A DNA stretch of 64,000 nucleotides, from NCBI RefSeq assembly GCF_006345805.1, contig NC_043012.1:8432001-8496000 (forward strand). Reading direction: 5' to 3'. The position numbers were made by a program, and so were the translations under genes. A model generated the notes under the pieces. The model searched no databases. It saw nothing but the letters and a program-made list of their open reading frames with translations, and was not told the origin of the DNA. Shown piece after piece: positions 30,905 to 62,011 of the stretch. Every line of letters starts with the position of its first letter. The stretch's first letter is position 1. Origin of the DNA: Octopus sinensis (taxonomy: Eukaryota).

Positions 30905-31164
30905 CGTAATAATAATAATAATGATGATGATAATATAATACAATAATAATAATAATAGTATTATAAAAAAATAATAATAATAATAAAATAATAATATTAA
31001 TAATAATAATAATATAAATAAAATAATAATAATAATATTAATAATAATAAAATAATAATAATAATAATAATATCTATAATAATAATAATATAATATAATA
31101 TTATAATAATAATAATATATGAATAATATCATAAGATTAATAATAATAATAATAATAATAATAA

Positions 31165-31195
<31 letters not shown>

Positions 31196-31317
31196 TGTAT
31201 AATAATAATAATAATAATCATAATAAAATAAATATTAATATAATAATAATATAATAATAATTAAATAATAATATAATAATATTATATAATAATAAGATTA
31301 ATAATAATAATATAATA

Positions 31318-31364
<47 letters not shown>

Positions 31365-31885
31365 TTAATAATAATATAATAATAATAATATATAATTTAA
31401 TATAATATAATAATAATAATAATATTAATAATAATATAAAAATAATAATAATAATAATATATTAATATAATAATAAGATAATAATAATAATAATAATAAT
31501 ATTAATAATAATAATAATATAATAATAATAATATAATAATAATATTAATAATAATAATAATAATATAATAATAATAATAATAATAAAATAATAATAATAA
31601 TAATATTAATATAGTATATAATAATAATACTAATATTAATAATAATAATAATAATAAATATATATAATAATAATAATAATATTAATAATAATAATAATAA
31701 TATAATAATAATAATATAATAATATAATAATAAATGTAATAATAATAATATAATATTAATAATAATAATATAATAATAAATAATAATAATAATAGTAATA
31801 ATAATAATAATAATAAATTAATAATAATAATAATAATAATATTAATATAATAATAATAATAAGAATAATATAATAATAATAATAA
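30905..31885. repeat. ~1 kb interrupted (AAT)n microsatellite
   Basis: AAT repeat with frequent single-base indels. Confidence 0.95.
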
Positions 31886-32120
31886 AAATCTATCTTTCTT
31901 TTATTGGCTACATGGGCTGATATATATAAACATAAAAGGACTTACAATGACATTAAAAGCTAAAAAACAGATGATACAATAGGTTTTGACGTACATGCAC
32001 ACAGAAAAATAACTAAAAATTAAACAAGTAAAACTCCCAATAGGGGGGCTGCTTAAGGTGAGTGGATTTGGTAGTTGAACTGAAACAAGCCCGTCGTATA
32101 CACACACACACACACATATT

Positions 32121-41146: not shown

Positions 41147-42267
41147 GTAGGCGCTATTTCTTTATGTTGCCCCCCCACCATCCCCATTGTATCCTTCATT
41201 ATGTTGTTTATTAGCTGCTTTTGTTGTTTCCATAGAGTAAGAATAGTTGGTACTTATTTGATTTTTAGCTCACCACAACTCTATTGGAATATAAAAACAC
41301 AATCAAGTTCTGAATAGTCTTGTGTATTGCATTGTTGATGCAACCAATTCTTAAAGTCCAATCTGTTTAAATGAAAGCCACACCTGAGTTGCTACCAGTT
41401 CCTGTTGTCATCTGAACCCTACCAGATCCTGTAATAATCTAATCTATTTAATTGTGAGCAACACTTGACACAACTAACACATTCTTACTCTTTATTTCTA
41501 GCAAGTCAAGTAACCATGTTGGCTCATTGTTGGTTTAGACCCACCAGTGTTTAAGATTGTTGGTTCAGTTTTAAGGGGCTGTGATCTACTGATCATGTTT
41601 AAGAGCATAGTCTCTCATGTCTTTAGGAATTTCCAAACCGCTGTTAAGGAACCTGCACTTTTGAGGTAAAAATGGTTTTTATTCCTTTCAGGTATAGAAA
41701 CTTTTCTCTTCAAGCAGTTCAATGATAACAGAACTGACTATGACTAGTGTTGTTATAATTTGTTATTGATTGTAGGAAAGGGAGGACATTTGGGCCACAA
41801 CACAATAATAACCAATGGTTGTACTTTGGACATTCTTCATGAAAATTACAAGACTTCATTACCAGGCTGGCGTGATGGGTGATAGGTTAACAAATATTTT
41901 GGACTCGCCAGCCTCGTCTGGCACCTGTGTCGGTGGCACATAAAAACACCATCCGAGCATGGCCGTTCGCCAGCCTCGTCTGGCACCTGTGTCTGTGGCA
42001 CATAAAATCACCCACTACACTCTCGGAGTGGTTGGCGTTAGGAAGGGCATCCAGCTGTAGAAACACTGCCAGATCTGACTGACCTGGTGCAGCCTTCGGG
42101 TTCCCCAGACCCCAGTTGAACCGTCCAACCCATGCTAGCATGGAAAGCGGACGTTAAATGATAAGGATAAGATAAGATTGAAATAGTTGACATGAAATGA
42201 AATGAAGGGAAATTTATGATGTTGATGATAGTTGTGATTTTATATATTTTTGTGATTTATTTTCCAG

Positions 42268-43300: not shown

Positions 43301-43436
43301 GAGATGGTACTGGGCATTGAATCTGACTCTGAAGAGGAGGATGAGAGTAATCTGTACCAAAAATGTAAGCAGCAGCTGAAGTTTATGAAAGAAAAGAACC
43401 TGCGAGATGCTAAATACAACAAACTTAAAGTGAAAA
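43301..43436 (+). CDS. UTP3: UTP3 exon (EMVLGIESDSEEEDES...KLKVK)
   Basis: Acceptor ttgcAG (weak pyrimidine tract), donor A|GTAAGT; 136 nt. EEEMVLGIESD aligns with SAS10 EEEVLALDMDD. Confidence 0.8.
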
Positions 43437-43739
43437 GTAAGTTGGTGTGTGTGTGTCAGGATTTTCATTTTGAATAAGTATATATATATATGTGTGTGTA
43501 TATACATATGTATATGTATATATATATTCGAAATACAATACCATATTAAAACGATTATATTGCCAATCTTCAGGTCTAGATTATATGAACTTATTTTGCT
43601 ATTTACATCCTATATAAAGATATGACAAGCTAAAATTATATAACTAGAAGTTGTCTGAATAAGTTTTCTTTAGTAAATAAAAACAGAAATGTGAAATAAA
43701 AGTAGGAACAAGAAATCTTAGTAAAAAGGAATGTTAACT

Positions 43740-43880
43740 TATCTGTATGGTAATTTTCACAGCACCAATTCTCATTCCTACCTCACAGCATTTGGCTGAG
43801 AAGCCATTCGGTGCTTGCTGAAGATCATCTTCTGATGAGCCAAGTAACACCATGTTGTCTACAAAGATATTTATATAATT
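43740..43880 (-). mobile_element. Degenerate LINE reverse-transcriptase fragment
   Basis: IFVDNMVLLGSSEDDLQQ...CCEVGMRI resembles the FADD motif and following helix of RTE-type RTs. Confidence 0.55.
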
Positions 43881-43937
43881 TTTTCTGATGTCTCTATAAT
43901 TATCAATTCTAACCAAATTTTTGTTTTGTTTTCAAAG

Positions 43938-44009
43938 AGGAAGAATATAACAAGAAATGGGGAGATAAAAAGTATGTTTTCTATGGAGGTCTTGGAGATG
44001 AAGAATATA
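43938..44009 (+). CDS. UTP3: UTP3 exon (K-EEYNKKWGDKKYVFYGGLGDEEY)
   Basis: Acceptor ttttgttttcaaAG, donor A|GTAAGT; 72 nt, phase 1/1. WGxKKxxFY matches SAS10 WGQRKKLYY. Confidence 0.88.
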
Positions 44010-44764: not shown

Positions 44765-45510
<746 letters not shown>

Positions 45511-46221: not shown

Positions 46222-46785
46222 GTGAGATCTTTATTGTTTTATGTGTATTGTTGTTGTTGTGCTTAGGCCGCTGGTTTGCCTTGGTCAATGAGACCTATGA
46301 TCAAAATGGTCCTAGGTGTCATGACCATCCAGTTTGTCCAGTGTCCTTTTTTAAAGACTGTTGTTTAGTCCTTTTGTTACTAACCTGGTCTGTGACATTT
46401 AGTGTTCTTTAGGGAGCTTTCTCTGGATGCTATCTCACAGCAAATTGCTGTATCAACAAAACACATACACTGTATATGTGCAACTGATATTGGCCTTTAT
46501 ATGTATATATATCATCATCATCATCATCATCATTTAGCGTCCGTTTTCCATGCTAGCATGGGTTGGACGGTTCAACTGGGGTCTGTGAAGCCAGAAGGCT
46601 GCATCAGGCCCAGTCTGATCTGGCAGTGTTTCTACGGCTGGATGCCCTTCCTAATGCCAACCACTCCGTGAGTGTAGTGGGTGCTTTTTACGTGCCACCC
46701 GCACAGGTGCCAGACGGAGCTGGCAAACGGCCATGATCGGATGGTGCTTTAGAGTGAGAGTTTTTGAAGTGATGCACAAATATTG

Positions 46786-48892: not shown

Positions 48893-49905
48893 GTTTGTAT
48901 TTAGGAAAAGAAAGGTGGGGGATGAGCAAGTTGGTGTTTAGCCCCAGGTCAGTCTTACTCAAGCTGACCTATGATCATAAGTGTTTAAGCCAGGACCATC
49001 CTGTCTTAAGAGTGCTATATAGGAATACATTATCTTGTGTATCCTTCCATTTTTTAAGATCATATGGTGCGATTTGAGAGATTTAGCTGTGGTTTCTTGA
49101 AAGTCAAGCAACTGCTAGGAATCCTTTCTCTTATTACAGGAAAGATTACGTTTTGCGAAGTGAAGTAGGATGGTATTTGTAACATCTGACATGTGTTTCT
49201 GTAACTCTGCAGCCATTTTATATTAATAGTTCAATACCCAGACTCGGAAGTGATGGGTGGCAGTTACATTCATAGGGTACTCCTGTAGAGTTCTTGTATT
49301 ACATGTACAGGGTACTTGTATTACGCTTTTAGGGTACTGTGCAGTTTTGTCCACAGAGTTTGAAATGGGATGCAAGTATTTTTAGGGTCCCTCTATGCTG
49401 CCAAGAATTTTATGTGAAGGGTACATGATTGCCAGTTCCGCCTCCACTGGCTTCCGTGCCAATGGCACGTAAAATGCACCAATCTGACCGTGGCCGATGC
49501 CAGCCTCGCCTGGCACCAGTGCAGGTGGCACGTAAAAAGCACCCACTACACTCATGGAGTGGTTGGCGTTAGGATGGGCATCCAGCTGTAGAAACATTGC
49601 CAGATAAGACCGGAGCCTGGTGCAGCCTTCTGGCTTCCCAGATCCCCGGTCAAACCGTCCAACCCATGCTAGCATGGAGAACGGACGTTAAACGATGATG
49701 ATGATGCAGTTCTGTACTAAGAGTTTGAAATGGGAAGGGAATTTTGTTGGAATATTAGTATTACTCTGTACCAGATCCTTGATAAGGGGCAGGATGATTA
49801 AGAATCTTGCTTCCCAATCATGTAGTTGTTTGCAATCTTTCAGTGACCTTCTCCTCTCACTCCAACTGAAGTTTTTTATATATATATATTTCTTTTTTTT
49901 TGTAG

Positions 49906-53045: not shown

Positions 53046-54236
53046 CATTCCTCCTGCTGTCAGTTGTTTTGTTTCCGAAGTTGAAGCTCTTTTGTTGCTG
53101 CTTGCAACCTTTTTAATGACTGTCATTGGGTGCCCTTCCTAATGCCAACCACTTTACAAAGTGTGCTGGATGCTTTTCCATAACTCCAGCACTAGTGGGA
53201 TTACCAAGTAACTTACAGAAAAAAAAGTAAAGGGGAAGAATTCCCCTCAAGTGAGTGGGGTTCTAGTAGAGGAGAATGAAGAGGCTTTATGGCAGGTATT
53301 GAGAGAGGTTGAAGTATGATAGACAGACAGGCACAGGTATATTGCCATAGAGGATGCTGAACCTTTCAGGTGAGGTGACAAAGGACCGAGATGCCCAGTG
53401 CCTTGCTGTACTCAAGGAAACCCATACTCTGCTGCATAAGTGTTAAGTCCCTCTAGTTGTGTAAAGCACTTGTGACGGTGCACATAAAAGTGCCTGTGCA
53501 GTGCCACGTTAAAAATGCCCGTGAGGTGCCTTGTTAAAGCACCTGTGCAGAACCATGTAAAAGCACCCAGCACACTCAGTAAAGTGTTTGGTGTTAAGAA
53601 GGGCATCCAACCATAGAAACCATGCGAAATCAGACTGGAGTCTGATGCAGGTCTGGTTAAATTGTCCAACCCATGTTTATTGGCTATTTGTAATGTTTCT
53701 TTCTTTTAATTAATATTTTGCTTAACTAAAAGGCAACAAGCTGGCAGAATCTTTAGCATGCTGGGCAGGATGCCTAAGGGCATTTCATCCTTCCTTGGAT
53801 TCTGAGTTCGGGTTCTATCATGGTCGACTTTGCCATGACGTTAAATGATGATATACATGAATACCCCAGTGTTATATAGGAGTGTGTGAGTAGCTGGAAA
53901 GAAGATAAAGAAGTTGGTGACAACTTATCAGGGTGTACTCTCAAGATACACGAAAGGGAAAATAAGAGAATGTGGATTGAGGGTTGGGAAGGAGGGGTGG
54001 ATAAGTTAATAGGGGTGTGAGAGGAGAGAGACAGGCAGTAGACGTTAATGTAATGAATAGAGCAAGGGTGGATGTCTAGTCAATGGTAAATATGAGTTAG
54101 TGGAGGAGGCGGTAAAAGAAATAGGAACGGCTCAGGAAGGAGCAGGTGCTAAGTGGAAGTTCTGAGATTAAAACTTGTTGTTTAAAAAAAAAATTTTCTT
54201 GTAATTTTCATTTGTTTTTCTCTCTCTCAAATCTAG

Positions 54237-54366
54237 CAAAGTTCCAAAAGATGAAATGGCAGAAACAAATGGAGAAGGCCTCATTGATTCTAACCATATT
54301 GATGCTGATGATGAGGAAGAGATTAATGGAGAGGGTGCTGATAAAAAGAGAGCAATTACTTACCAG
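54237..54366 (+). CDS. UTP3: UTP3 exon (S-KVPKDEMAE...ADKKRAITYQ)
   Basis: Acceptor ctctcaaatctAG, donor CAG|GTGAGA; 130 nt; KRAITYQ starts the Sas10 C-terminal domain. Confidence 0.95.
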
Positions 54367-55557: not shown

Positions 55558-55665
55558 ATGGAGAAGAACAAAGGTTTGACTCGATATAGCAAGAAGGAAA
55601 AAGCTAATCCTCGTGTGAAGCACAGGACAAAGTTCAAGAAGGCCAAAATTCGAAGAAAGGGACAG
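55558..55665 (+). CDS. UTP3: UTP3 exon, Sas10 C-terminal domain (MEKNKGLTRYSKKEKANPRVKHRTKFKKAKIRRKGQ)
   Basis: Acceptor ttctcttaaAG, donor CAG|GTAAGC; 108 nt; matches NRGLT..RNPRVKHREKFRRAKIRRRGQ. Confidence 0.97.
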
Positions 55666-55771
55666 GTAAGCCTCTCACTCTTTTCTTATTGGTTTTATTC
55701 ATGTATTTTTGTTCTGTTTTGACTAATTTTTTCGTCTTTACTCTTATAACCATCCATGCCAACACACTCAC

Positions 55772-55811
<40 letters not shown>

Positions 55812-55812
55812 T

Positions 55813-56146
55813 TACGGAGATGTACTTGCATAGCGAGTGACTTGATCTGAGATCGTGTGCTAGAACGAAAACAATTGCAGCGTGGAAGGTGTTTCTAAGC
55901 CATTTAAGAAACACAAAAACCGTTAGATTCACTTCAACATTCAAATTTAATTTGTCAAAATATTTTCGTCGCTTTGAGACCGCAAACTCTTCACGACAAA
56001 ACTAGCACAAAGTTTTGTCAGTGAACAGGTTGCGGTCTCAAAGTGACGAAAATATTTTGACAAATTAAATTTGAATGTTGAAGTGAATCTAACGGTTTTT
56101 GTGTTTCTTAAATGGCTTAGAAACACCTTCCATGCTGCAATTGTTT
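55813..56146. mobile_element. Fold-back MITE-like element, right end apparently truncated
   Basis: Arms 55869-56003 and 56011-56146 are near-perfect reverse complements; TA-repeat flanks. Confidence 0.75.
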
Positions 56147-56147
56147 A

Positions 56148-56190
<43 letters not shown>

Positions 56191-56435
56191 TATGTGTATG
56201 ATGATATATATTTACATACACACATGTACATACATACATATATATATAGTAAGTGAATTGGGATATTTAATCCAGATGTTTAACTTGAAGAGATACTTTT
56301 AGATTGTGGCAATCTGAAAATTGAAAAGGAGGAAATTTCTTTATGATGCTACTGTTCCAATAATCTGAAAAACGCAACATCCATAGAGTATATATCATTA
56401 AAAAAAAACATTGAAAACGCACACACAAACGCACG

Positions 56436-56467
<32 letters not shown>

Positions 56468-57072
56468 GCTGTGTAGTTAAGTTTGTTCCCCAAGTGTGTG
56501 GCTTACCTGGGAAAAGTGACTAGATTGGTGGTGGTAGTTGTAGTGGTTGAAATTATCCAGGGATGCTTGCTGCATGGAAACTTAATAGTAAAGCGGATGC
56601 TAGCATACTGAATGTTGTAAGCTAAGAAATGGAAATTAATTCTAATTAAACCTTTAACAATGAGAGCAGTCATTACACAAATGACTAATTGCGTATCATT
56701 AAAATGCTGGACTTGTTTACTACACAGTCATATGATCAAACTCTGTGGTTACAGTTATTGTCTACTGCCCCAAGGCAGCCAACTTGTAAGTTCAATTGCC
56801 TCAGTCTGCTTGACTGACAACAGGTTCCACTTCTAGAAATGCAAGCGGAAAACAGGGGAGACAATTCTAATAGCTTAATTTAAATTACATAATTTCATAA
56901 TTGATAAATAAAACAACTTAAGCTCTCCCCTTCGTATCTTTTGCTTCCTCTCTTCCTTTCAGTACTTCCTCTTCTTACTCTCTCCTTATTCTTTGTCCTC
57001 TCCTTCATTACCTTGTATTCCCATTTCCCCCACTTCTCTGTCTGTCTGTCTGTCTCTCTCTGATCCTGTAAC

Positions 57073-57436
57073 ACATCTCTAATCTCACATCTCTAATCTC
57101 ACATCTCTAATCTCACATCTCTAATCTCGCATCTCTAATCTCACATCTCTGATCTCGCATCTCTAATCTCACATCTCTAATCTCGCATCTCTAATCTCAC
57201 ATCTCTAATCTCACATCTCTAATCTCACATCTCTAATCTCGCATCTCTAATCTCGCATCTCTAATCTCACATCTCTAATCTCACATCTCTAATCTCACAT
57301 CTCTAATCTCACATCTCTAATCTCACATCTCTAATCTCGCATCTCTAATCTCACATCTCTAATCTCGCATCTCTAATCTCACATCTCTAATCTCGCATCT
57401 CTAATCTCACATCTCTGATCTCACATCTCTAATCTC
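57073..57436 (+). repeat. 14 bp minisatellite, 26 copies, (A/G)CATCTCT(A/G)ATCTC
   Basis: 364 bp = 26 x 14; 8 units start with G and 2 carry CTGAT; ends 6 nt before the last UTP3 exon. Confidence 0.97.
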
Positions 57437-57442
57437 TTCCAG

Positions 57443-57532
57443 GTTCGACAGCCGATGACCGAGATGAAGCGCTATGGGGGAGAGTTGTTTGGTATTCGCT
57501 CTGGTGTCAAACACAGCATCAAGCTGAAATGA
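57443..57532 (+). CDS. UTP3: UTP3 last coding exon (VRQPMTEMKRYGGELFGIRSGVKHSIKLK*)
   Basis: Acceptor ctcttccAG; 90 nt ending TGA; matches the SAS10 C-terminus RYSGELSGIRAGVKKSIKLK. Confidence 0.97.
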   Translation, partial: VRQPMTEMKRYGGELFGIRSGVKHSIKLK

Positions 57533-57967
57533 TGGACCACGTTGAACCACAGCAAACATAAAGAGGGTTTTATTTCTGGACCATTCTCAACTGCTCCTGC
57601 GGTTCTTTATATGGCAGCATTGTCTTTTGCACACACTCTCTGTGTGTACAAGCACGTGCAATTTATGTATATATATATATATACCGTATTTGTGTGTATA
57701 ATATACATATATATATACACATTAATACACACATTAAAAATATAAAACATATCTTAAATGTGTTGTTGCTTTTATATCATCATCATCATCATCATCATCT
57801 AACGTCCGTTTTCCATGCTAGCATGGGTTGGACGGTTCGACTGGGGTCTGCTAAGCCATGGAGGCTGCACCAGGCTCCAGTCTGATCTGGCAGTGTTTCT
57901 ACGGCTGGATGCCCTTCCTAATGCCAACCACTCCGTGAGTGTAGTGTATATGTTCATTGTTTTTTTC

Positions 57968-58146
57968 TTCAACCCATTAGCATTTAAACTGGCCATATCT
58001 GGCCCAAATGGTCTTCTGTTTCATGGTGAATCCAGCTAGAACTGGTTTCCACCTATCTCTAATTGAAATCTCAAAGCTCTGAGATAAGAACAATGTAAAT
58101 AAATAAGCATTACATTTGACAGAATAATTTGAATGTTAAAGGGTTA
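57968..58146. mobile_element. piggyBac-like MITE (TTAA/CCCTT termini)
   Basis: TCAACCCATTAGCATTTAAA ... TTTGAATGTTAAAGGGTTAA. Related ends at ~28590-28746, ~9170-9300, ~50750-50790 and ~55090-55198. Confidence 0.55.
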
Positions 58147-59688: not shown

Positions 59689-60394
59689 TATAATAATAAC
59701 TGGGCTTGAGCATGGTGCTAGTGGATCTCCGTCGTTTGACTGAATTAACATGTACGTGGCTGTGTATTCCGCAGGCTCTTGTGGTCTTAACGTAATTTCC
59801 AGGGAGAATCATCGCGACAAGATTGTACTTTTGAGAGTTACAAGTAAATTCTTCCGATGGAATTTTATGCAGTTTCCGTCTACTTGGCTTTATTGAAAAA
59901 GTATGAATCACCCCGAAACTATAGAAAATATGCTTCAGAGCTACCTATACTTAAGATGTTCGCTTCGCAACCGCAAAGTCCCGAGTTCGATCCATAGCGA
60001 GGTAGCTCTGAAGCATATTTTCTATAGTTTCGGGGTGATTCATACTTTTTCAATAAAGCCAAGTAGACGGAAACTGCATAAAATTCCATCGGAAGAATTT
60101 ACTTGTAACTCTCAAAAGTACAATCTTGTCGCGATGATTCTCCCTGGAAATTACGTTAAGACCACAAGAGCCTGCGGAATACACAGCCACGTACATGTTA
60201 ATTCAGTCAAACGACGGAGATCCACTAGCACCATGCTCAAGCCCAGTTATTATTATAGGCGCAGGAGTGGCTGTGTGGTAAGTAGCTTGCTTACGAACTG
60301 CATGGTTCCGGGTTCAGTCCCACTGCGTGGCACCTTGGGCAAGTGTCTTCTACTATAGCCTCGGGCCGACCAAAGCCTTGTGAGTGGATTTGGT
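59552..60394. repeat. Long palindrome: two 395 bp arms, 53 nt spacer
   Basis: 59552-59946 is the reverse complement of 60000-60394; five mismatches seen, all in the SINE-derived outer part. Confidence 0.92.
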
Positions 60395-60783
60395 CTGTGT
60401 GGTAAGTAGCTTGCTAACCAACCACATGGTTCCGGGTTCAGTCCCACTGCGTGGCATCTTGGGCTAGTGTCTTCTGCTATAGCCCCGGGCCGACCAATGC
60501 CTTGTGAGTGGATTTGGTAGATGGAAACTGAAAGAAGCCTGTCGTATATATGTATGTATATGTATATGTGTGTGTTTGTGTGTCTGTGTTTGTCCCCCTA
60601 GCATTGCTTGACAACCGATGCTGGTGTGTTTACGTCCCCGTCACTTAGCGGTTCGGCAAAATAGACCGATAGAATAAGTACTGGGCTTACAAAGAATAAG
60701 TCCCGGGGTCGATTTGTTCGACTAAAGGCGGTGCTCCAGCATGGCCGCAGTCAAATGACTGAAACAAGTAAAAGAGTAAAGAG
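60395..60783 (+). mobile_element. SINE family A, near full-length, abutting the right palindrome arm
   Basis: Starts CTGTGTGGTAAGTAGC directly after the truncated arm. Confidence 0.9.
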
Positions 60784-61484
60784 TATACAGTACCTACAAA
60801 AGTGTGGTGTCCAGTTTACATTAAACGTTTGTATTAAACTGAATCGGTCAAAGGGAAATTACTCATGTATAAAGTATTGTCCCTGCGATAAGTTTTACAG
60901 AATTATCTCCCTTATTCTAATTTTATAAATATTGTCTATTTTCCTTTTTTTGTGCTAAAAATGTGGAACATTACCAGGAATCGAAAATAAGAATAATGTT
61001 GCCATTGTTTCATGAATGTTCCATAGCCACATTGACTGAAGGTCACAGTGGTTATAGATCTAAGGTACTTATTTCTTACCTGCATTGATTAATGATCTAA
61101 TGACGTCACATTACTTAGTAACGTAGAAATAACAACTTCGACCCTTTGAGCGACTTTATCTTGCTTGCTTCTTCTGTTATCATCACTAGAATTTACAGAC
61201 ATAGAGCCGCCGAGGTGGCCTTTCGTGGTCGTAGAAATATGCTAGAAATAGCAGCTAAATCTTCCTAAAATAAAATCTTGTTGTCTTGAAATACCACATG
61301 AGATAATTTTATCCCAGATACACATAAAAAGACGACTTCGATTCTAGGTCTGCTCTGTAAGGGTTGACATTGGCTTAAAGAAGAACAAGAACAAGAAATA
61401 TGCAACAAGCAGAGACTATAATGGTGAGAATAGGAAACACATGGAATGTCATTTTTGCGTGTTAAGTATAATCGTTATTAGATC

Positions 61485-62011
61485 GATTACATCGACCCCA
61501 GTATGCGACTAGAACTTAATTTATCAACCCCGAAATGACGAAAGGCAAAGTCGACCTCAGCGGAATTTGAACTCAGAGCGTAAAGACAGACGAAATACCT
61601 ATTTCTTTACTACCAACAAGGGGCTAAACACAGAGGGGACAAACAAGGACAGACAAACTGATTAAGTCGATTATATCGACCCCAGTGCGTAACTGGTATT
61701 TATTTAATCGACCCCGAAAGGATGAAAGGCAAAGTCGACCATGGCGGAATTTGAACTCAGAACGTAGCGGCAGACGAAATACCTATTTCTTTACTACCCA
61801 CAAGGGGCTAAACACAGAGAGGACAAACAAGGACAGACAAAGGGATTAAGTCGATTACATCGACCCCAGTGCGTAACTGGTATTTATTTAATCGACCCCG
61901 AAAGGATGAAAGGCAAAGTCGACCTCGGCGGAATTTGAACTCAGAACGTAGCGACAGACGAAATACCGCGAGGCATTTCGCCCGGCGTGCTAACGATTCT
62001 GCCAGCTCGCC
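61485..62011 (-). mobile_element. SINE family D: one full head plus tandem 184 bp units
   Basis: GGCGAGCTGGCAGAATCGTTAGCACG head and GAGGTCGACTTTGCCTTTCATCC core; unit starts at 61485, 61669, 61853. Other family D copies at ~3870, 7946, 15860, 17795, 58860. Confidence 0.85.

What the first reader, a model, noticed from the sequence alone, without database searches (positions are those of the whole stretch)
56963..57442. The last UTP3 splice acceptor is built from 26 tandem copies of a branch-point plus pyrimidine unit
Seen: 26 x 14 bp units ACATCTCTAATCTC run up to TTCCAG|GTT of the last exon. Every unit contains CTAAT, and the only internal variant (units 6 and 25) is CTGAT. There is no AG from 56963 to 57440 (478 nt). 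Established: CTRAY is the metazoan branch-point consensus, and long AG-exclusion zones mark distant branch points. Inference: the intron's own branch site was tandemly amplified, giving up to 26 redundant branch points. Copy number could tune splicing of the exon that encodes the conserved C-terminus of an essential rRNA-processing factor. Having only two A>G variants is too few to prove selection.
Basis: partly seen in the sequence, partly recalled or inferred. Interest (0 to 1): 0.75.

Follow-up and report, generated by a model that had tools for sequence, protein, structure and literature searches.

The report
Species-specific minisatellite at UTP3's last acceptor
The last intron of the Octopus sinensis UTP3/SAS10 gene ends in 26 tandem copies of a 14-bp unit that looks like a branch site, but close relatives have only about two copies and the same final 40 bases, so this is most likely a young, tolerated repeat expansion and not a purpose-built splice signal.

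Summary
Window 57073-57436 holds 26 head-to-tail copies of ACATCTCTAATCTC. They end 6 nt before the TTCCAG|GTT acceptor of the last coding exon of SAS10/UTP3. The 478-nt AG-free stretch (56963-57440) is the longest in the window.

The window is Octopus sinensis (100% match to GCA_006345805.1). At the orthologous site, O. vulgaris has exactly 2 units (ACATCTCTGATCTC GCATCTCTAATCTC) before the same TTCCAG. O. bimaculoides has about 2.5 degenerate units. Argonauta hians has no repeat, an ordinary acceptor and a 36-nt AG-free zone.

The expansion is therefore specific to O. sinensis. Both "variants" are the ancestral differences between the two seed units. CTGAT sits 24 nt before the AG in O. sinensis and O. 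vulgaris, and 22 nt before it in Argonauta. The AG-free state follows from composition, because the unit consensus has no G and the flank is 83% pyrimidine.

Best reading: replication slippage amplified the branch-site-bearing unit. The core acceptor is unchanged. The extra units are tolerated because they add no AG and each carries a CTRAY motif. Redundant branch points are possible, but tuning of splicing is untested. Interest is low to moderate.

The parts
55558..55665 (+). Penultimate coding exon of SAS10/UTP3 (MEKNKGL...KIRRKGQ). The donor is CAG|GTAAGC.
   Evidence: Exact match to residues 377-412 of P0121; sequence read; acceptor AG checked.
55666..57442 (+). Last intron, 1777 nt, GT...AG, phase 0.
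   Evidence: The RRKGQ|VRQPM junction is conserved in O. sinensis isoforms X1-X3, O. vulgaris, O. bimaculoides and Argonauta.
56963..57072 (+). Unique CT-rich flank, AG-free (51 T, 40 C, 11 A, 8 G). It contains an older CTGAT at 57060-57064. It is orthologous in O. vulgaris and O. bimaculoides.
   Evidence: The probability of no AG under mononucleotide shuffling is 0.42.
57073..57436 (+). Minisatellite of 26 x 14 bp. Unit types: ACATCTCTAATCTC x16, GCATCTCTAATCTC x8, ACATCTCTGATCTC x2. Order along the array: aaaagVgagaaaggaaaaagagagVa (a, g and V stand for the three types in that order).
   Evidence: The RNA is predicted to be unstructured (z = -0.03).
57409..57436 (+). Units 25-26 (CTGAT unit then CTAAT unit). 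These correspond to the two-unit ancestral acceptor core. The candidate branch A is 57418 (24 nt before the acceptor G). The A at 57432 (10 nt) is probably too close, and the A at 57404 in unit 24 lies at 38 nt.
   Evidence: O. vulgaris L004 23022-23049 is the same 28 nt apart from one base. Argonauta has CTGAT at 22 nt.
57437..57442 (+). TTCCAG, the 3' splice site.
   Evidence: identical in O. vulgaris and O. bimaculoides.
57443..57532 (+). Last coding exon (29 codons plus TGA), the end of the Sas10 C-terminal domain (PF09368).

Best explanation
This is a recent minisatellite expansion specific to O. sinensis. It was produced by replication slippage or unequal exchange in a slippage-prone, CT-rich 3' end of the last UTP3/SAS10 intron.

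The seed was a pre-existing pair of 14-bp units, which are themselves a diverged dimer of a 7-mer NNATCTC. This pair sat directly before the TTCCAG acceptor and carried the ancestral branch-site candidate, CTGAT about 24 nt before the AG.

The expansion added 24 units (336 bp). The present 3'-most 38 nt of the intron differ from O. vulgaris at only one base, so the core acceptor (branch site, pyrimidine tract, AG) is unchanged. Splicing most likely still uses a branch A in unit 25 (24 nt) and/or unit 24 (38 nt, which has better U2 complementarity).

The extra units are tolerated for three reasons:
(i) They contain no AG, so they create no competing 3' splice site.
(ii) Each unit brings its own CTRAY motif, so expansion never moves a branch site away from the AG.
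(iii) The RNA is unstructured.

Upstream units could act as minor alternative branch points, but every such lariat would lead to the same mRNA.

Shown here: the anatomy, the species-specificity of the expansion, the ancestry of the variants, and the compositional origin of the AG-free zone. Inferred: which branch A is used, and that the expansion is neutral.
For: - Array anatomy.
- The window is O. sinensis, 100% identical to L001 from GCA_006345805.1.
- The orthologous site has 2 units in O. vulgaris, about 2.5 degenerate units in O. bimaculoides and none in Argonauta hians. The flanks are orthologous and the O. sinensis insert is 336 bp.
- All three unit types are combinations of the two states already present in the O. 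vulgaris pair (A or G at position 1, A or G at position 9). No other substitution occurs in 364 bp. Roughly 5 would be expected in 336 bp if the array were as old as the sinensis-vulgaris split, using about 3% flank divergence. This is a rough estimate.
- AG-free zones: 478 nt in O. sinensis, 168 in O. vulgaris, 151 in O. bimaculoides, 36 in Argonauta. Composition-matched shuffles are AG-free 21-42% of the time.
- The same tract has separate duplications in O. vulgaris: a 13-16 bp unit repeated 3-4 times, and a perfect 67-nt copy of the whole acceptor 303 bp upstream. This shows general instability of the tract.
- The other 11 mapped acceptors of the gene have ordinary AG-free zones of 21-106 nt, and only one has a strict CTRAY.
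- All annotated isoforms use the same last junction.
- No predicted RNA structure.
- Typical human branch-point distance is 19-37 nt (PMC10078293, citing Mercer et al. 2015, whose paper is PMC4315302).
Against: - No RNA data were available, so the branch points actually used are unknown, and neutrality is inferred rather than measured.
- The array rests on a single assembly, so its exact copy number and any polymorphism are unverified.
- The 14-mer could not be counted across the octopus genome.
- An array with 26 SF1/U2-type and CU-rich motifs directly at an acceptor could in principle change splicing kinetics.
- Alternative polarity, in which a long ancestral array contracted twice, cannot be formally excluded with three species.
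Confidence: 0.7

Rival explanations
1. One reading: the array is a functional set of up to 26 redundant branch points within a selectively maintained AG-exclusion zone, and copy number tunes splicing of the last UTP3 exon.
For: - Each unit matches CTRAY/yUnAy and is followed by pyrimidines.
- There is no AG for 478 nt.
- Distant branch points with large AG-exclusion zones do exist (PMC1431707).
- Most human introns use several branch points (PMC5959240, PMC4315302).
Against: - The sister species splices the same junction with 2 units.
- The AG-free state follows from composition and from the youth of the array.
- The CTGAT variants are ancestral.
- Good branch-site candidates lie at 24 and 38 nt, so nothing forces distal use.
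- In PMC1431707 only about one-fifth to one-half of AG-free zones of 100 nt or more indicate distant branch points, and such exons are typically alternatively spliced. No isoform differs at this junction here.
Confidence: 0.1
2. The array acts as a binding platform for CU-rich-element proteins (PTB/hnRNP I type; UCUCU occurs in every unit) or as a local sink for SF1/U2. In that role it would slow or regulate removal of the last intron, causing intron retention rather than exon skipping.
For: - The RNA is single-stranded, repetitive and CU-rich.
- Verified distant-branch-point exons are often regulated by PTB (PMC1431707).
- Tandem UACUAAC repeats in Gomafu bind SF1 and delay splicing in vitro (PMC3116199).
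Against: - There is no binding or expression evidence.
- The motif is CUCUAAU, not UACUAAC.
- The array is absent from close relatives, so it is not a conserved regulatory feature.
- UTP3 is a housekeeping ribosome-biogenesis gene with no annotated isoform at this junction.
Confidence: 0.08
3. An assembly artefact: the true array is shorter or longer, or the reference individual carries an unusual allele.
For: Only one O. sinensis assembly holds the locus. A look-up for independent contigs found nothing.
Against: - The array has an irregular, non-periodic order of three unit types, which is unlike a collapse or stutter artefact.
- At 364 bp it is well within long-read length. From my own knowledge, not checked here, the assembly is PacBio-based.
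- The flanks are clean and orthologous.
Confidence: 0.05
4. The long array is ancestral and was independently reduced to about 2 units in O. vulgaris and O. bimaculoides.
For: Minisatellites both expand and contract, and only three Octopus species were sampled.
Against: - It requires two independent contractions to nearly the same length.
- The O. bimaculoides units are degenerate (ACTTCTGATCCCCC, ACATCTC, GCATCTCTAATCTG), as expected for an old short state.
- The O. sinensis array carries no private substitutions.
Confidence: 0.05

Closest known systems
Intronic minisatellites/VNTRs and splicing-associated tandem repeats (spl-TRs). Examples: the (TG)n(T)n tract at the CFTR exon 9 acceptor, and the NARS2 GTTTTTT repeat between branch site and 3' splice site (PMC10078293).
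   Same: A tandem repeat lying in the last tens to hundreds of nucleotides of an intron, with copy number differing between close lineages and a position where it could affect recognition of the 3' splice site.
   Different: In NARS2, expansion pushes the branch site away from the AG and weakens splicing. Here every unit carries its own CTRAY, so the distance from the nearest branch-site candidate to the AG stays at 24 or 38 nt whatever the copy number. No association between length and splicing has been measured here.
Distant-branch-point exons with large AG-exclusion zones (Gooding et al. 2006, PMC1431707).
   Same: An AG-free zone of 478 nt, larger than the verified examples quoted in that paper (PTB exon 11, 381 nt; GABBR1 exon 23, 287 nt). 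The region is pyrimidine-rich.
   Different: Those exons have the best branch site near the 5' end of the zone and no good candidate near the acceptor. Their zones are conserved between species and the exons are alternatively spliced. Here good candidates lie at 24 and 38 nt, the zone grew by 336 nt in one species only, and the junction is constitutive in the annotation.
Tandem UACUAAC repeats of the Gomafu/MIAT lncRNA that bind SF1 (PMC3116199).
   Same: Several tandem copies of a branch-site-like motif in one transcript.
   Different: Gomafu's repeats are the perfect yeast consensus, lie in an exon of a nuclear-retained lncRNA, and are conserved from chicken to mammals. Here the motif is the weaker CUCUAAU/CUCUGAU, is intronic and is found in one species only.
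Multiple or redundant branch points in ordinary introns (Mercer et al. 2015, PMC4315302; Pineda and Bradley 2018, PMC5959240).
   Same: Several usable branch adenosines upstream of one acceptor, all giving the same mRNA.
   Different: Known clusters lie within a tight window near the 3' splice site and are not made of identical tandem units.

Membership tests
Minisatellite / VNTR | Head-to-tail array of a 10-100 bp unit in many copies | tested here: met
   26.1 copies, period 14, 94% matches; register confirmed.
Minisatellite / VNTR | Copy number varies between closely related genomes at the orthologous site | tested here: met
   26 units in O. sinensis, 2 in O. vulgaris, about 2.5 in O. bimaculoides, 0 in Argonauta.
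Minisatellite / VNTR | Copy number polymorphic among individuals of the species | not testable with these tools
   Only one O. sinensis assembly is reachable.
Distant-branch-point exon (large AG-exclusion zone class) | AG-exclusion zone of at least 100-150 nt upstream of the acceptor | tested here: met
   478 nt.
Distant-branch-point exon (large AG-exclusion zone class) | AG depletion beyond what base composition gives | tested here: not met
   The unit consensus lacks G. Flank shuffles are AG-free in 42% of trials for O. sinensis and 21-22% for the orthologous zones.
Distant-branch-point exon (large AG-exclusion zone class) | Best branch site lies near the 5' end of the zone, with no good candidate within about 40 nt of the acceptor | tested here: not met
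   CTGAT at 24 nt and CTAAT at 38 nt. CTGAT lies at 24 nt in O. vulgaris too and at 22 nt in Argonauta (33 nt in O. bimaculoides).
Distant-branch-point exon (large AG-exclusion zone class) | Arrangement conserved in orthologues | tested here: not met
   Zones of 168, 151 and 36 nt in O. vulgaris, O. bimaculoides and Argonauta.
Distant-branch-point exon (large AG-exclusion zone class) | Branch point mapped experimentally at a distance of more than 100 nt | not testable with these tools
   No lariat or RNA-seq data are available.
Splicing-associated tandem repeat (spl-TR) | Repeat length correlates with usage of a nearby splice junction | not testable with these tools
   Needs RNA-seq from individuals or species with different copy numbers. 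Annotated isoforms show no variation at this junction.
SF1-binding tandem branch-site repeats (Gomafu type) | Tandem copies of the exact UACUAAC consensus | tested here: not met
   The units read CUCUAAU or CUCUGAU.
SAS10/UTP3 gene (host gene identity) | Sas10/Utp3 (PF04000) and Sas10 C-terminal (PF09368) domains; orthology to annotated SAS10 | tested here: met
   The best hit, with 92% identity to a draft query assembled from the window's exons, is O. sinensis SAS10 isoform X1 (P0121), which carries both domains. Thirteen blocks of P0121 match the window translation exactly.

The most novel reading that the evidence does not exclude
A branch-site-carrying minisatellite could behave as a self-compensating repeat at a 3' splice site. 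Because each unit brings its own branch site and pyrimidine run and cannot form AG, it can expand freely at an essential gene's acceptor. In O. sinensis, the 26 units may then be used as multiple branch points or as an SF1/U2AF/PTB loading platform, so that array length measurably changes the rate of last-intron removal and thus UTP3 output between individuals or species.
Probability: 0.1. Interest if true: 0.5.

Novelty: new member of a known kind. Interest (0 to 1): 0.25.

Why it matters
If the neutral reading holds, this is an ordinary lineage-specific intronic minisatellite in a repeat-rich cephalopod genome. Its value is as a clean natural example of why some repeats are tolerated right at a splice site: they add no AG and carry their own branch motif.

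It also gives a ready-made natural comparison for asking how the spliceosome chooses among identical, evenly spaced branch sites: 2 units in O. vulgaris against 26 in O. sinensis, with identical exons and core acceptor. It is a caution that long AG-free zones made of low-complexity or repeated sequence should not be read as evidence for distant branch points.

Tried and rejected
- A first protein search using only the last three exons returned short fragments and no cephalopod. A 370-aa draft assembled from the exons was needed to reach O. sinensis and Argonauta SAS10.
- Passing raw frame translations to Pfam failed because of stop codons.
- A first greedy exon mapper was misled by short matches. 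It was replaced by mapping of maximal exact matches.
- A look-up of the minus-strand ORF that overlaps the exon and units 25-26, intended to find independent O. sinensis contigs, found nothing.
- RNA structure bringing distal units close to the acceptor was rejected. The fold is no better than shuffles (z = -0.03).
- A hidden RNA gene in the intron or the window was rejected. There were no Rfam matches at gathering score.
- The 14-mer as part of a dispersed element: no other copy occurs on either strand in the 64-kb window. In the four loci fetched (about 92 kb), only the orthologous site and its O. vulgaris duplicate match. This is far too small a sample to settle the genome-wide question.
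- I did not scan the prokaryotic, viral or metagenome collections for the 14-mer, because a negative result there would say nothing about the octopus genome.

Full report
**1. The observation**

Tandem Repeats Finder reports one array at 57072-57436: period 14, 26.1 copies, 94% matches, score 660.

The 14-mer, allowing up to 2 mismatches, occurs 26 times in the window. All hits are in this array and on the + strand. Shuffled sequence gives 0.69 hits on average.

Every unit carries CTAAT at unit positions 7-11, except units 6 and 25, which carry CTGAT. There is no AG between 56963 and 57440. This is the longest AG-free stretch in the 64-kb window (480 between consecutive AGs, against 227 for the next longest).

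Eight units (5, 7, 9, 13, 14, 20, 22, 24) begin with G instead of A. There are therefore three unit types: ACATCTCTAATCTC x16, GCATCTCTAATCTC x8 and ACATCTCTGATCTC x2. Their order is irregular: aaaagVgagaaaggaaaaagagagVa.

**2. The gene**

The exon after the array encodes VRQPMTEMKRYGGELFGIRSGVKHSIKLK followed by a stop. Searching with the last three exons hits Sas10 C-terminal domain proteins (PF09368). A 370-aa draft of the whole protein hits [quoted passage not shown] at 92% identity (P0121, XP_029646443.1), then Argonauta hians SAS10-like at 72%.

Thirteen blocks of P0121 match the window translation exactly, between 41027 and 57529. The penultimate coding exon is 55558-55665, with donor CAG|GTAAGC. 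The last intron is 55666-57442 (1777 nt, phase 0). The last coding exon is 57443-57532 including TGA.

The RRKGQ|VRQPM junction is the same in O. sinensis isoforms X1-X3, O. vulgaris, O. bimaculoides and Argonauta. The annotated isoforms differ elsewhere. So "last UTP3 splice acceptor" is correct.

**3. The organism and the orthologous sites**

The window is 100% identical over 2301 bp to the O. sinensis chromosome CM016874.1 of GCA_006345805.1. I fetched the SAS10 loci of O. bimaculoides, O. vulgaris and Argonauta hians.

- **O. vulgaris.** The intron ends ...ctctctctctgatcctgtaac ACATCTCTGATCTC GCATCTCTAATCTC TTCCAG|GTTCGACAG. That is exactly two units.
- **O. bimaculoides.** It ends ...ctgatcctgtaac ACTTCTGATCCCCC ACATCTC GCATCTCTAATCTG TTCCAG|GTTCGACAG. 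That is about 2.5 degenerate units.
- **Argonauta hians.** There is no repeat. The acceptor is ordinary...ccactgattccattttctttcatttttag|GTACGAACA.

A three-species alignment shows orthologous flanks on both sides and a 336-bp (24-unit) surplus in O. sinensis. The expansion from about 2 units to 26 is therefore specific to the O. sinensis lineage.

**4. What the comparison says about the variants and the branch site**

The two O. vulgaris units differ from each other at unit position 1 (A/G) and position 9 (G/A). All three O. sinensis unit types are combinations of those same two states. No other substitution exists in the 364 bp. The CTGAT units are thus not new A>G mutations in a CTAAT array. 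CTGAT is the ancestral state of one seed unit.

The distance from the A of CTGAT to the G of the acceptor AG is:
- 24 nt in O. sinensis (A at 57418);
- 24 nt in O. vulgaris;
- 33 nt in O. bimaculoides;
- 22 nt in Argonauta.

This is the only branch-site candidate shared by all four species, and it lies inside the typical 19-37 nt range (PMC10078293, citing Mercer et al. 2015, whose paper is PMC4315302).

The CTAAT of unit 26 is 10 nt from the AG, probably too close. The CTAAT of unit 24 is at 38 nt. By my own base-pairing count against the conserved U2 GUAGUA box, CTAAT matches slightly better than CTGAT (A-U instead of G-U at the position before the bulged A).

The last 38 nt of the O. sinensis intron differ from O. 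vulgaris only at 57423 (A against G). The core acceptor is therefore unchanged, and the 24 extra units lie upstream of it.

**5. The AG-free zone**

The unit consensus contains no G. The two G variants follow C (position 1) or T (position 9) and cannot form AG. Only 104 of 1092 possible single substitutions in the array would create an AG, and only 24 of 364 transitions would. The array shows essentially no new substitutions.

The non-repeat part of the zone (56963-57072) is 83% pyrimidine, with 11 A and 8 G. Mononucleotide shuffles of it are AG-free 42% of the time. The whole zones of O. vulgaris (168 nt) and O. bimaculoides (151 nt) are AG-free in 21-22% of shuffles.

The zone thus grew from about 150 nt to 478 nt purely by adding G-poor units. 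It is not evidence for selection or for a distant branch point.

Gooding et al. estimate that only one-fifth to one-half of human zones of 100 nt or more mark distant branch points. They also discuss the same composition caveat (PMC1431707).

The other 11 mapped acceptors of this gene have zones of 21-106 nt, and only one has a strict CTRAY.

**6. Age and mechanism of origin**

Alignable intron sequence differs by about 3% between O. sinensis and O. vulgaris in the cleanest block. It differs by more in the CT-rich tract, where the alignment is uncertain. If the 336 extra bp were as old as that split, about 5 private substitutions would be expected. None is seen (a rough estimate that ignores homogenisation).

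The 14-mer is itself a diverged dimer of a 7-mer (ACATCTC/TAATCTC; TRF period 7 in O. vulgaris).

The same tract is unstable in O. vulgaris in other ways:
- a 13-16 bp unit (CTCCTTATTCTTTGTC) is present 3-4 times;
- a perfect 67-nt copy of the whole acceptor, including the first 6 exon bases, lies 303 bp upstream.

All of this points to slippage and small duplications in low-complexity sequence as the origin.

**7. How it most likely works**

Shown: the anatomy, the species-specificity, the ancestral origin of the variants, and the compositional AG-free state. The array RNA has no predicted structure (MFE -13.5 kcal/mol, shuffles -13.4, z = -0.03), and the window has no Rfam match.

Inferred: splicing still uses the proximal branch sites (57418 and/or 57404). 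The extra units are tolerated because they add no AG and because each one carries a branch motif, so expansion never lengthens the distance from a branch-site candidate to the AG. The NARS2 repeat is the opposite case: there, expansion between branch site and AG weakens splicing (PMC10078293).

Distal units might be used occasionally. With no intervening AG, every lariat would give the same mRNA. I put this reading at about 0.7.

**8. Rivals**

- A CU-rich protein-binding or SF1-sink role, by analogy with PTB-regulated distant-branch-point exons (PMC1431707) and the UACUAAC repeats of Gomafu (PMC3116199) (about 0.08).
- An assembly artefact or unusual allele (about 0.05).
- An ancestral long array that contracted twice (about 0.05).

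None of these could be tested further, because no RNA data, population data or whole octopus genome were reachable.

**9. Comparison with what is known, and verdict**

The feature meets the definition of a minisatellite with between-species copy-number change. It fails three defining features of the distant-branch-point exon class: AG depletion beyond composition, absence of a proximal branch site, and conservation in orthologues. It is not a Gomafu-type perfect UACUAAC repeat. Whether it is a splicing-associated tandem repeat cannot be tested here.

It is a new member of a known kind: a lineage-specific intronic minisatellite. The neat detail is that the amplified unit is the acceptor's own branch-site segment. 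Interest is low to moderate (0.25).

Noticed in passing
L004 22692-22758 and 22995-23061 (O. vulgaris): A perfect 67-nt direct repeat with 303-bp spacing. The whole last acceptor (CT-rich flank, the two 14-bp units, TTCCAG and the first 6 exon bases GTTCGA) is duplicated upstream inside the last intron. This creates a decoy 3' splice site which, if used, would give a truncated reading frame. The O. vulgaris annotated protein (P0244) ends with the same C-terminus as O. sinensis, consistent with use of the downstream copy.
   Followed up: partly
window 55869-55994 and 56021-56146: An inverted repeat with 126-nt arms, 97% complementary, 26 nt apart. It lies inside the last UTP3 intron and is flanked by TA microsatellites. 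It looks like a foldback or MITE-type insertion. This part of the intron does not align to O. bimaculoides.
   Followed up: partly
L004 22890-22947 (O. vulgaris): An independent 13-16 bp tandem expansion (CTCCTTATTCTTTGTC, 3-4 copies) in the same CT-rich tract upstream of the acceptor. It is absent from O. sinensis and O. bimaculoides.
   Followed up: partly
window 57073-57436; L004 23024-23050: The 14-bp unit is a diverged dimer of a 7-mer (ACATCTC / TAATCTC). O. bimaculoides shows three 7-mers in a row (ACATCTC GCATCTC TAATCTG).
   Followed up: partly
window 30907-31889: A very long (TAA)n microsatellite, about 338 copies with 81% matches. The window is generally dense in di-, tri- and tetranucleotide repeats (111 TRF rows).
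   Followed up: no
window 61483-61967 and 60271-60518; also e.g. 41887-42141, 45045-45340, 46402-46736, 49382-49675, 57799-58039: Tandem copies (184 bp x2.6; 124 bp x2) and many dispersed copies, on both strands, of a SINE-like element whose translation reads MLAWVGRFDWGL... / ...LDALPNANHS... One copy lies just downstream of the UTP3 stop codon.
   Followed up: no
window 54235-54237 (exon 11 acceptor) and 43436-44008: O. sinensis SAS10 isoforms X2 and X3 differ from X1 elsewhere. X2 replaces SK with R at the exon 10/11 junction, one residue shorter. X3 lacks 20 residues at the exon encoding EEYNKKWGDKKYVFYGGLGDEEY. Neither difference involves the last intron.
   Followed up: partly
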